DNA of 63,931 nucleotides, the filler included, from Octopus bimaculoides (lineage: Eukaryota): the NCBI RefSeq assembly GCF_001194135.2. It is 4 parts of 3 records of this genome, joined end to end, with 100 filler letters (N's around TTAATTAATTAA, not from the genome) between each part and the next. Parts side by side here need not be neighbours in the genome. Positions count along the whole stretch, not along the records: positions 27,502 to 43,892 come from NC_068983.1; 3 more parts are not named here. One strand, written 5' to 3'. Of the stretch, positions 32,236 through 33,488 are shown in pieces. How positions within the stretch are numbered: position 1 is the stretch's first letter; the number at the start of each line of letters is the position of its first letter. Both the position numbers and the translations under genes were made by a program. The notes under the pieces were generated by a model. It was given only the letters and a program-made list of their open reading frames with translations. It was not told the origin of the DNA and made no database searches.

Positions 32236-32429
32236 AATTACAGTGCCGTAAAAATATGGTGTATAAGTTCTCCACTCCTATATATCAACCATCATGCTAT
32301 AATAGAAGAGTCCCTCGCATTGGAAAATTTACAGAAGCCTGTGTATGCAAAAAGGGGTTCATACTTAGTGGAACAGAATGTGTTCGAGTCTCATCTTGTG
32401 GCTGTAAATACAAGGGATTATACATAAAA
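32236..32429 (+). CDS. TIL (trypsin-inhibitor-like cysteine-rich) domain exon of a zonadhesin/FCGBP/tectorin-like secreted protein
   Basis: Pyrimidine tract + CAG, GTAAGT donor. Encodes (E)LQCRKNMVYKFSTPIYQPSCYNRRVPRIGKFTEACVCKKGFILSGTECVRVSSCGCKYKGLYIK, with the typical E-x-C-x-C-x-x-GF-x-LSG-x-x-CV...CGC-x-x-x-G-x-Y signature. Confidence 0.88.
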
Positions 32430-33316
32430 GTAAGTACAACGCATGCAATGTTAACAAATATTTTCCAGTCCTGATAAATCTCATAAAAATTTAAGTGGAA
32501 TTAGTTTACAAAACACTCACTCTCGCATAGGAAAACAATGGAGTATCATGAATAAAAATGTTAATCAGGCATATGTCTATATTCATAGATCCAAGTATAT
32601 TATCTAGAAGTATCTAATAAACGATGTGTACATATATATTTGTACAACTAATATATGCAATTTTATAGTATGTGTGACAGCGTAAGTCTGTCTATAGTGG
32701 GTTGGAAAATACTAAAACTTATCAAAGAAAGTATGGTTTGAAACAACGGCATAGAGTGTCAACATTTTAATATATTATTTCGATTGAGTGGTATTCACTT
32801 TTAAGGTGTACAATAAATTGACATCATGCAAAAGCAATCTGATTACAGATAAAGAGAATTTATCAAATTCTCAAATTTATTTCAATGCTGGTTTTCGTGA
32901 AACAGTTAAATGATTTTGTTTCATATTCTTTTATGGTGAAGAAAATTTTGAAAACATGCTAATTAAATGTAATGAGGGGCTTTAAAATTCATACATATCC
33001 ATCCAGACACACATCGCACCCATTCATTCACATACACATATGTCATTGGGCATAAATATATTCTAAGGACATAAAAGAAAATGATTCCATACTGCTATTA
33101 TAACATTTGTTACAACTTGTGTTGGAGTAAAACAAATCTATATGTGCCTTAGATATTTATAATCGAAGGTATAGCCCAATAAGTATTTATCAGTTATTTG
33201 CATTTCTCTTTCGTATATATCCAAATACAAACACTCTTGTATACATATAAATATCTTAACTATTCCGTGCGATCACACGCACAATATAATATTTGTCTGA
33301 TTAATTTTTTTACTAG

Positions 33317-33488
33317 CGAGGTTCAAGCTTCCTGTTGAACGATTGCTCAAGGAGAATTTCATGCAGGAACAATGGCAGAATTAAAGCGTCAAGACCTTGT
33401 CCTAAATTTTCTGTGTGTCAAGCGGTAAATGGAAATCGCGTGTGTAAATGTAAGAAAGGAGATGTTATCAAGAGGGGAAAATGTGTCG
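33317..33488 (+). CDS. TILa/VWC-like + EGF-like exon of the same gene
   Basis: TTTTTTTACTAG acceptor, GTAAGT donor, phase 0 continuing the previous exon: RGSSFLLNDCSRRISCRNNGRIKASRPCPKFSVCQAVNGNRVCKCKKGDVIKRGKCV. Confidence 0.85.

What the first reader, a model, noticed from the sequence alone, without database searches (positions are those of the whole stretch)
32236..33488. TIL-TILa module with apparently paired cysteine loss and extreme positive charge
Seen: the TIL exon has 6 of the usual 10 Cys. Known: the TIL disulfide pattern is C1-C7, C2-C6, C3-C5, C4-C10, C8-C9. The missing ones align to C2, C3, C5 and C6, i.e. two whole bridges, those that clamp the protease-inhibitory loop; that region is now RRVPRIGK. 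In the TILa/VWC-like exon the missing pair aligns to C3 and C5, also partners in VWC folds as I recall. By my count the 122 residues have 28 K/R and 5 D/E. Inference: paired loss argues for selection rather than decay, and for a repurposed cationic protein (antimicrobial, polyanion-binding, skin, egg or salivary) rather than a canonical inhibitor.
Basis: partly seen in the sequence, partly recalled or inferred. Interest (0 to 1): 0.7.

Follow-up and report, generated by a model that had tools for sequence, protein, structure and literature searches.

The report
Basic, disulfide-poor TIL-E cassette, octopus gene
These two exons encode the TIL and E modules of a von Willebrand-type "D assembly" in an octopus zonadhesin-like gene; they have lost three complete disulfide bridges and are unusually positively charged, which makes this an unusual member of a well-known module family, not a converted protease inhibitor.

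Summary
Exons 32236-32429 and 33317-33488 (+ strand) splice in frame into 122 residues. The TIL module has 6 of its 10 usual Cys and the E (TILa) module has 4 of 6. The peptide has 29 K/R and 4 D/E (net +25).

The missing Cys are true partners. In 285 aligned TIL-E modules, Cys are lost almost only as the pairs T2+T6, T3+T5, T8+T9 and E3+E5. The same reduced pattern occurs in an Octopus bimaculoides paralogue, an Argonauta homologue and a scallop protein. It is therefore an inherited subfamily trait, not an event at this locus.

A C8 exon lies upstream in the same piece (27502-27743) and joins the TIL exon in phase. An existing 276-aa gene model adds a VWD domain. The module is therefore the TIL-E stalk of a VWD-C8-TIL-E D assembly, as in VWF, mucins and FCGBP. 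It was never a free-standing inhibitor.

The charge is the distinctive feature: it is the highest of the 285 modules (mean -4.7, SD 6.1). Transcription, the 3' continuation of the gene and its function were not established. My best guess is a secreted matrix or mucus protein that binds polyanions. Interest is modest.

The parts
27502..27743 (+). C8-domain exon, cut at the piece's 5' edge. It encodes ...NKHAIRRCNEIINK...VNWRKALKC and ends with one base (a) before gtaagt (phase 1).
   Evidence: Open frame seen and sequence. It is 100% identical to residues 197-276 of gene model P0158, and Pfam C8 covers P0158 residues 204-276. It is 50% identical to the Argonauta P0029 C8 exon and 66.8% identical at the DNA level to L001 13176-13398.
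27744..32235 (+). Intron (4.5 kb) holding microsatellites, two assembly gaps (30101-30328, 31365-31533) and interspersed repeats.
   Evidence: No family exon was found inside it.
32236..32429 (+). TIL exon: split codon a|aa = Lys, then 64 codons. It holds six TIL Cys (C1, C4, C7, C8, C9, C10) plus the first Cys of the E module (CGC).
   Evidence: Translation. Pfam TIL scores 23.2 bits, just under the 24.5 cut-off. Aligned to FCGBP and in alignment A2. AF2 mean pLDDT is 86.7. Foldseek gives TMq 0.80 to a MUC5AC TIL and 0.77 to FCGBP.
32307..32330 (+). Loop RRVPRIGK between TIL C4 and C7. In inhibitor TILs this stretch is the reactive-site loop, clamped by C2-C6 and C3-C5. Here it has no Cys.
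   Evidence: It falls in the lowest-confidence block of the TIL model (residues 21-30, pLDDT 76).
32430..33316 (+). Intron (887 bp, phase 0).
   Evidence: gtaagt donor and ...tttttttactag acceptor.
33317..33488 (+). Rest of the E (TILa) module plus an EGF-like tail: 57 codons and one base, followed by a phase-1 donor g|gtaagt. E positions C3 and C5 are replaced by I and A.
   Evidence: Pfam TILa scores 28.5 bits against a 27 cut-off, over residues 55-108. tblastn matches to P0029, P0049 and P0065. The Argonauta exon has the same length and the same phase-1 donor (...YINGVCTg|gtaaat).

Best explanation
The two exons are a phase 1-1 'TIL-E cassette' of an octopod gene from the family annotated as 'zonadhesin-like'. 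The family's domains include EGF, VWA, VWD-C8-TIL-E and PAN.

In this gene the order is VWD (outside the piece), the C8 exon, the TIL exon and the E exon. Together these form a von Willebrand-type D assembly. In such assemblies TIL and E form a rigid, disulfide-rich stalk next to the globular VWD/C8 part. They do not inhibit proteases.

This lineage lost bridge T2-T6 and bridge E3-E5; the 8-Cys state is common in octopod paralogues, a Lingula protein and vertebrate FCGBP-like proteins. A subfamily then also lost T3-T5. It includes the window gene, O. bimaculoides XP_014767465, an Argonauta homologue and a scallop protein. What remains is the core T1-T7, T4-T10, T8-T9, E1-E4 and E2-E6.

Shown: gene structure, domain identity, Cys pattern, conservation and charge.

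Inferred: the module still folds as TIL-E, with a freer C4-C7 loop. The protein is secreted, and its very high positive charge (+25 on the cassette, about +51 on 347 known residues, pI about 9.9) lets it bind a polyanionic partner such as sulfated glycans, acidic mucins or microbial surfaces. It would then act as a matrix, mucus or adhesive component. This is comparable to the basic residues of VWF TIL'E' that hold factor VIII.
For: - Gene structure: the C8 exon and its phase-matched junction.
- Gene model: P0158 has VWD + C8 and is 100% identical to the C8 exon.
- Domain hits: Pfam TILa is above its cut-off and TIL just below. The only PDB sequence hits are FCGBP D assemblies.
- Structure: the AF2 model of the window TIL exon has pLDDT 86.7 and matches TIL modules of MUC5AC, FCGBP, MUC5B, VWF and MUC2. 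The AF2 model of the paralogue's C8-TIL-E has pLDDT 91.5 and matches VWF, MUC5AC, FCGBP and MUC2 D assemblies at E about 1e-8.
- Cys pattern: it is shared with P0049/P0151/P0152, P0029, P0093 and P0147.
- Conserved exon layout: the Argonauta locus has the same exon boundaries and phases.
- Charge: top rank among 285 modules and a basic whole protein.
- Role of TIL/E as spacers: PMC7599080.
- Basic residues matter elsewhere: Arg816 and Arg854 in VWF TIL'E' are type 2N (FVIII-binding) sites (PMC12858306).
Against: - No transcript or protein holding these two exons was found. That index also missed its own query members, so this is weak evidence.
- Model P0158 lacks about 49 residues of the VWD core compared with P0152 and P0029. 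The cause could be an assembly gap, a missed exon or a real deletion.
- No further exon was found in the 10.4 kb downstream, although relatives continue into EGF or PAN exons.
- The near-invariant Gly before C7 is Ala here.
- The polyanion-binding and matrix role is inference only. The AF2 models were guided by alignments of TIL modules, so they cannot prove that the fold survives the loss of the bridges.
Confidence: 0.8

Rival explanations
1. The locus is a decaying or recently dead duplicate within a tandem family, and the odd Cys pattern and charge have no function.
For: - The only known model (P0158) is truncated and lacks part of the VWD domain.
- No database protein includes the TIL-E exons.
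- No downstream exon was found in 10.4 kb.
- The family sits in a tandem cluster, where dead copies are common.
- There is a Gly-to-Ala change at a near-invariant site.
Against: - 202 codons in three exons stay open in DNA of about 35% GC. With about 7% stop codons expected per random codon, the chance of this is roughly 3e-7 (my estimate from base composition).
- All three donors are gtaagt, the acceptors have polypyrimidine tracts, and the phases match.
- Every retained family Cys is present and the Cys count is even.
- The same reduced pattern is kept in annotated paralogues and homologues.
- The database gap is weak evidence, and another old O. bimaculoides model (P0167) also omits exactly its TIL-E cassette.
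Confidence: 0.12
2. This is the reader's reading: a TIL-type protease inhibitor converted into a small cationic effector, for example an antimicrobial peptide released from the protein.
For: - The net charge is +25.
- The former reactive-site loop is unclamped and holds a minimal R-x-x-R motif (RVPR|I). Dibasic sites (KR, RR, KK) are frequent.
- Free TIL peptides exist in frog skin and bees, and they are fold matches (8hwu and 1ccv).
Against: - The module is embedded in a D assembly and is not free-standing.
- Its closest relatives by sequence and fold are FCGBP, mucin and VWF TILs.
- The RVPR motif is not conserved in P0029 or P0049.
- No signal peptide or propeptide layout of a small effector is visible.
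- Nothing was tested for activity.
Confidence: 0.05
3. The cassette belongs to a fast-evolving reproductive (gamete-recognition) protein, as the name 'zonadhesin-like' suggests, and its charge reflects co-evolution with an acidic egg-coat partner.
For: - Relatives are annotated 'zonadhesin-like'.
- A transcript annotated as ZAN was up-regulated in Octopus maya oviducal gland at fertilisation (PMC8976471).
- The cassette is about 46% identical to paralogue P0049, while VWD+C8 is about 63% identical outside the gap.
Against: - The name comes from automatic similarity to D assemblies. None of the other zonadhesin features (MAM domains, mucin region, transmembrane end) was seen.
- The O. maya transcript was not linked to this gene.
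- There is no expression data for this locus.
Confidence: 0.03

Closest known systems
D assemblies (VWD-C8-TIL-E) of FCGBP, gel-forming mucins (MUC2, MUC5AC, MUC5B), VWF and zonadhesin
   Same: - The module order C8 -> TIL -> E is the same, with VWD upstream in the gene model.
- FCGBP modules are the best sequence matches in the PDB (per-module E about 2e-7).
- The best fold matches are TILs of MUC5AC and FCGBP (TMq 0.77-0.80).
- The CGC junction between TIL and E is shared.
- A GDPH motif is present in the VWD of P0158.
   Different: - TIL has 3 disulfides instead of 5, and E has 2 instead of 3.
- The net charge is +25, against a family mean of about -5.
- The relatives with known architecture combine the assembly with VWA, EGF and PAN/Apple domains, not with mucin repeats.
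Octopod 'zonadhesin-like' paralogues (O. bimaculoides XP_014767465.1/P0049, XP_052822700.1/P0153; O. sinensis XP_029633300.1 and XP_029633305.1; O. vulgaris CAI9719088.1; Argonauta hians GAB1600471.1/P0029)
   Same: - Identity over the cassette is 34-52%.
- Exon boundaries and phases match those of the Argonauta locus.
- All lack T2-T6 and E3-E5.
- P0049 and P0029 also lack T3-T5, as the window does.
- P0049/P0152 is also strongly basic (cassette +17; P0152 pI 9.4).
   Different: - The window copy is a separate paralogue; no orthologue above 52% identity was retrieved.
- It is the most basic of them all.
- Most paralogues keep T3-T5 (the 8-Cys state) and are near neutral.
8-Cys TIL protease inhibitors (Bombyx BmSPI38/39, BmFPI-F; bracovirus Egf1.0; CvT-TIL)
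   Same: They show whole-bridge loss of C2-C6 from the TIL fold (PMC10004685).
   Different: - They are small, single-domain secreted inhibitors that keep C3-C5 and a functional reactive-site loop.
- The window module also lacks C3-C5 and sits inside a D assembly.
VWF TIL'E' (factor VIII binding region, PDB 2MHP)
   Same: It is a TIL-E pair in which basic residues (Arg816, Arg854) mediate binding of an acidic partner. It was a fold match.
   Different: - It has the full set of 5+3 disulfides and no extreme net charge.
- It lacks its own VWD/C8.
- The analogy is functional only and was not tested here.

Membership tests
TIL domain (Pfam PF01826) | Profile score at or above Pfam's gathering cut-off | tested here: not met
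   23.2 bits against a 24.5 cut-off, E 7.7e-5, covering profile positions 1-55 of 55. This is a narrow miss, explained by four absent Cys.
TIL domain (Pfam PF01826) | Ten Cys forming bridges 1-7, 2-6, 3-5, 4-10 and 8-9 | tested here: not met
   Only C1, C4, C7, C8, C9 and C10 are present. This leaves three possible bridges: 1-7, 4-10 and 8-9. The actual pairing was not measured.
TIL domain (Pfam PF01826) | TIL fold | tested here: met
   The AF2 model has pLDDT 86.7. Foldseek gives TMq 0.80 to MUC5AC, 0.77 to FCGBP, 0.69 to LL-TIL and 0.68 to AMCI. This is a prediction guided by a TIL alignment, not an experiment.
E module / TILa (Pfam PF12714) | Profile score at or above the gathering cut-off | tested here: met
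   28.5 bits against a 27 cut-off, over residues 55-108 and profile positions 1-55 of 55.
E module / TILa (Pfam PF12714) | Six Cys (1-4, 2-6 and 3-5 in VWF E', recalled from the 2MHP work) | tested here: not met
   E3 and E5 are replaced by I and A. Their partnership is supported by co-loss in 32 modules from 23 proteins, against 5 single losses.
von Willebrand-type D assembly (VWD-C8-TIL-E) | C8 immediately upstream of TIL in the same reading frame | tested here: met
   The C8 exon at 27502-27743 ends in phase 1 and the TIL exon starts in phase 1, giving the junction codon AAA. The layout is the same in Argonauta L001.
von Willebrand-type D assembly (VWD-C8-TIL-E) | VWD domain upstream of C8 | tested here: inconclusive
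   It lies outside the piece. Model P0158 has Pfam VWD (75.8 bits) in two stretches but lacks about 49 core residues compared with P0152 and P0029.
TIL-type serine protease inhibitors (Ascaris family) | Small free-standing secreted domain with a reactive-site loop clamped by C2-C6 and C3-C5 | tested here: not met
   The module is embedded in a multidomain gene, and both clamping bridges are absent. Inhibitory activity is not testable with these tools.
Zonadhesin proper | MAM domains, a mucin-like region, several D assemblies and a transmembrane end | not tested
   Only one D assembly is known for this gene. The name on its relatives is an automatic annotation.
Cationic antimicrobial peptides | Short, cationic, released peptide with membrane activity | not testable with these tools
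   Only the positive charge is met. No sign of release was found and no assay was possible.

The most novel reading that the evidence does not exclude
The window gene and its O. bimaculoides paralogue XP_014767465 represent a polycationic subfamily of D-assembly proteins not described in the papers I searched. In it, loss of the two loop-clamping TIL bridges and of one E bridge, together with a shift of about 30 charge units, turned the TIL-E stalk into a flexible polyanion-binding surface. Possible uses are octopus mucus, egg-case cement, adhesive secretion or surface defence.
Probability: 0.2. Interest if true: 0.5.

Novelty: new member of a known kind. Interest (0 to 1): 0.27.

Why it matters
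The result extends an old, truncated gene model (VWD + C8, 276 aa) by a TIL-E cassette. It also shows that the first O. bimaculoides annotation omitted that cassette in at least two family members.

More generally, the survey of 285 modules shows that TIL-E modules lose cysteines bridge by bridge. Sequence co-variation alone therefore recovers the known disulfide map. A three-bridge TIL core (1-7, 4-10, 8-9) is kept in relatives from several lophotrochozoan lineages.

If the extreme positive charge turns out to be functional, the protein would be a candidate polyanion-binding component of cephalopod mucus, adhesive or egg coats. As it stands, this is a modest annotation and evolution result, not a new kind of system.

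Tried and rejected
- **Word-index searches.** Searches with the 121-aa cassette and with the 202-aa C8-TIL-E found nothing except P0158. A profile of ten family segments did not even return its own members. I therefore treat these negatives as weak.
- **Exact look-up of P0158.** No encoding contig is on record, so the upstream VWD exons and the source record could not be read.
- **Hunt for downstream exons (33489-43892).** I ran tblastn with 167 family proteins, a relaxed tblastn with P0049 and P0065 (which carry PAN domains), and an EGF-pattern scan in all six frames. Nothing was found. Read-through of the last donor gives GKYINS-stop. I considered this as a terminal exon and rejected it. The resemblance to the end of P0029 (...ERYING) is an artefact of a truncated model, and the Argonauta exon really ends ...YINGVCTg|gtaaat, like the window.
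- **AlphaFold on the spliced window peptide.** I modelled the TIL exon alone and the paralogue's C8-TIL-E instead.
- **dN/dS.** Only homologues of 52% identity or less were available, so synonymous sites would be saturated. I did not compute it.
- **Literature.** I found nothing on this gene family in octopus mucus or oviducal papers beyond generic names, nothing for LOC115228872, and no description of a 6-Cys TIL.
- **Other scans of the piece.** Rfam and tRNA scans were empty. Pfam on transposon-like ORFs in and downstream of the introns gave no hits.

Full report
**What is in the sequence.** The piece (27502-43892) is AT-rich, microsatellite-rich eukaryotic DNA with five assembly gaps.

On the + strand there are two exons with textbook splice signals. 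The first is 32236-32429 (ag|AA ... AAA|gtaagt) and the second is 33317-33488 (ag|CG ... TCG|gtaagt). In the frame that stays open they encode 64 and 57 residues. With the split first codon this gives 122 residues: 14 Cys, 29 K/R and 4 D/E, for net +25 and pI 10.0. Pfam finds TILa above its cut-off (28.5 vs 27 bits) and TIL just below (23.2 vs 24.5). The only sequence relatives among solved structures are the repeated D assemblies of mouse FCGBP.

**Context: it is part of a D assembly.** The very start of the piece (27502-27743) is an open frame with the C8-domain signature. It ends ...WRKALKC plus one base before gtaagt. That phase-1 end fits the phase-1 start of the TIL exon, and the junction codon is AAA = Lys.

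A 276-residue predicted protein in UniParc (P0158) is 100% identical to this exon and stops exactly there. Upstream it carries a VWD domain with a GDPH motif. The gene therefore reads VWD - C8 - TIL - E, the D assembly of VWF, gel-forming mucins, FCGBP and zonadhesin (architecture as stated in PMC12858306).

**Relatives.** The closest relatives from an exhaustive HMMER scan are octopod proteins:
- Argonauta hians GAB1600471.1 (P0029, 52%)
- O. bimaculoides 'zonadhesin-like' XP_014767465.1 (P0049, 46%)
- further O. bimaculoides, O. sinensis and O. vulgaris proteins that combine EGF, VWA, VWD-C8-TIL-E and PAN/Apple domains

The Argonauta locus (L001) has the same three exons with the same boundaries. 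Its E exon ends ...YINGVCTg|gtaaat, the same length and phase as the window's ...KRGKCVg|gtaagt. In the O. bimaculoides chromosome assembly the family lies in a tandem cluster. Interspersed repeats in the window's introns match copies there at up to 90% identity. This fits, but does not prove, an O. bimaculoides origin.

**The cysteine pattern.** I aligned the window cassette with 284 near-full-length TIL-E stretches from the 150 best hits. Twenty columns are Cys in most sequences. At TIL C2, C3, C5 and C6 the window has S, Y, a gap and F. At E C3 and C5 it has I and A. All other family Cys are present.

The canonical TIL connectivity (1-7, 2-6, 3-5, 4-10, 8-9) is quoted in PMC10004685. The E' connectivity of VWF (1-4, 2-6, 3-5) I recall from the 2MHP work and did not re-read.

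The alignment recovers these pairs by co-loss, independently of any structure:

| Pair | Modules with both lost | Proteins | Modules with one lost |
|---|---|---|---|
| T2 / T6 | 51 | 35 | 1 |
| T3 / T5 | 10 | 10 | 2 |
| T8 / T9 | 9 | 9 | 0 |
| E3 / E5 | 32 | 23 | 5 |

It is also the ordinary way these modules lose cysteines.

The exact window pattern recurs in several proteins. They are P0049 with its 90%-identity cluster mates P0151 and P0152, Argonauta P0029, a Pecten maximus protein (P0093) and an unnamed assembly-derived protein (P0147). The intermediate 8-Cys state (T2/T6 lost, with or without E3/E5) is frequent in octopod paralogues, a Lingula protein and vertebrate FCGBP-like proteins. 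Eight-Cys TILs lacking C2/C6 are already described in insect inhibitors. I found no paper describing a 6-Cys TIL.

One caveat: the 285 modules were chosen by similarity to a reduced-Cys query. Reduced forms are therefore over-represented, and their frequencies are not family-wide estimates.

**Does it still look like a TIL?** An AlphaFold2 model of the window's TIL exon (31-sequence alignment) has mean pLDDT 86.7. Its weakest block (76) lies over residues 21-30, the unclamped YNRRVPRIGK loop. Foldseek places the model on the TILs of MUC5AC (TMq 0.80, rmsd 2.1), FCGBP (0.77), MUC5B, VWF and MUC2. It also matches free TIL peptides such as LL-TIL, AMCI and the Ascaris inhibitors.

The spliced window peptide could not be submitted. 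I therefore modelled the C8-TIL-E of paralogue P0049, which has the same Cys pattern. That model has pLDDT 91.5 and matches D assemblies at E about 1e-8. These models lean on TIL alignments. They show compatibility with the fold, not proof.

**The charge.** Net +25 is the highest of the 285 modules (mean -4.7, SD 6.1). The next highest is +17, reached by P0049 (with P0151/P0152) and by one module of a fish FCGBP-like protein. The C8 exon is also basic (+12 over 80 residues). P0158 from its first VWD Cys plus the cassette gives 347 residues with net +51 and pI 9.9. Paralogue P0152 has pI 9.4, and the other family members are near neutral. Both Lys (28 codons) and Arg (18 codons, of six codon types) contribute across the three exons. 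AT-rich codon bias alone therefore does not explain the charge.

**Is the locus alive?** In favour:
- 202 codons in three exons are open. My rough estimate for random sequence of this composition is about 3e-7.
- The splice sites are consensus and the phases match.
- Every retained family Cys is present, and the Cys count is even.

Against, or unknown:
- No database protein contains the cassette. The same index failed to return its own query sequences, so this says little.
- P0158 lacks about 49 residues of the VWD core.
- No exon follows within 10.4 kb, whereas relatives continue into EGF or PAN exons.

One more observation is relevant. Another early O. bimaculoides model, P0167, is 88-89% identical to O. 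vulgaris P0106 but skips exactly the 126-residue TIL-E cassette. Because the cassette is phase 1-1 (366 nt), skipping it keeps the frame. Either the old annotation systematically missed these exons or the cassette is optional in transcripts.

**How it most likely works.** In D assemblies the TIL and E modules are disulfide-rich spacers beside the globular VWD/C8 unit. They are variable, but they share a fold and a core disulfide pattern (PMC7599080).

The window cassette keeps that core and has shed the two bridges that, in inhibitor TILs, clamp the reactive-site loop. Inside a D assembly that loop has no inhibitory role, so 'repurposed inhibitor' is the wrong frame.

The step I infer is that the polycationic surface binds a polyanionic partner in an extracellular matrix, mucus, adhesive or egg-coat setting. 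The nearest documented parallel is VWF TIL'E', where Arg816 and Arg854 are needed to hold factor VIII. No tool result here bears on tissue or partner.

**Verdict.** The feature is a real, probably functional, unusually basic and disulfide-poor TIL-E cassette of an octopus zonadhesin-like D-assembly gene. It is a new member of a known kind, with a subfamily trait (6-Cys TIL, 4-Cys E) that I did not find described. Interest is modest (0.27).

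Noticed in passing
window 32236-33488; proteins P0167, P0106 and P0158: The TIL+E exon pair is a symmetric phase 1-1 cassette of 366 nt. The O. bimaculoides model P0167 (A0A0L8GYH4) skips exactly the homologous 126-residue cassette of its O. vulgaris counterpart P0106. The model of the window gene (P0158) also stops at C8. Either early gene models missed these exons or the cassette is optional in transcripts.
   Followed up: partly
P0158 (gene model upstream of the piece): The VWD domain of the window gene's model lacks about 49 core residues compared with P0152 and P0029 (...VDVKL|VKFDGNHRV...). 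It carries a GDPH motif (SGDPHYKTFDG), the sequence that PMC10880436 describes as a site of autocatalytic Asp-Pro cleavage in VWD domains.
   Followed up: partly
window 35367-35658, 43066-43502, 34176-34429: These are interspersed repeats. 35367-35658 is 90% identical to a copy inside an unrelated family gene on O. bimaculoides chromosome CM046603.1 (L002 20284-20566). The 43.1-43.5 kb element matches several copies in both orientations in L002.
   Followed up: partly
window 28451-28987, with ORF 28488-28685 on the minus strand: This is a repeat with 67-71% identical copies in L002. Its ORF (...DERSGRPATSRTEKNIADLRAAQGKNRRVTFRELS...) looks to me, from memory, like the N-terminal DNA-binding part of a mariner-type transposase. 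Pfam gave no hit.
   Followed up: partly
window 39588-39976 (+) and 42147-42275 (-): Both ORFs look like remnants of mobile elements. The first recalls a retroelement tail (...KTIPVVIDALGMI...). The second recalls a helicase motif (...MTINQSEGQTL...) of Helitron/PIF1-like elements. Both readings are from memory, and Pfam gave no hit.
   Followed up: no
window 30101-30328, 31365-31533, 35659-36394, 37830-37866, 39021-39209: These are assembly gaps (runs of N). Four of the five are flanked by TA/TG/GT dinucleotide or AAT trinucleotide microsatellites, typical of a short-read draft assembly. An exon could be hidden in the 736-base gap downstream of the E exon.
   Followed up: no
window 36909-37129: A 110-bp unit is present twice in tandem at 85% identity. 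It is unexplained.
   Followed up: no
window 32307-32324: The unclamped loop holds RRVPR|I, a minimal R-x-x-R motif of the proprotein-convertase type. It is not conserved in P0029 (NKITPKAT) or P0049 (NRNPVPFS), so it is probably a by-product of the K/R enrichment.
   Followed up: partly
L001 (Argonauta hians BAAFZT010000015.1) 8093-8200 and 16680-16802: EGF-like exons flank the Argonauta VWD-C8-TIL-E unit. The deposited 422-aa model (GAB1600471.1) stops 11 bases before the true end of its E exon. That 'partial' model is therefore a fragment of a larger multidomain gene.
   Followed up: partly
L002 (O. bimaculoides CM046603.1, 46.12-46.16 Mb): Three family genes (EGF/VWA/VWD; VWA/VWD/C8; VWD/C8/TIL/VWA/EGF/VWD/C8) lie next to each other, one of them on the opposite strand. 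This forms a tandem cluster.
   Followed up: no
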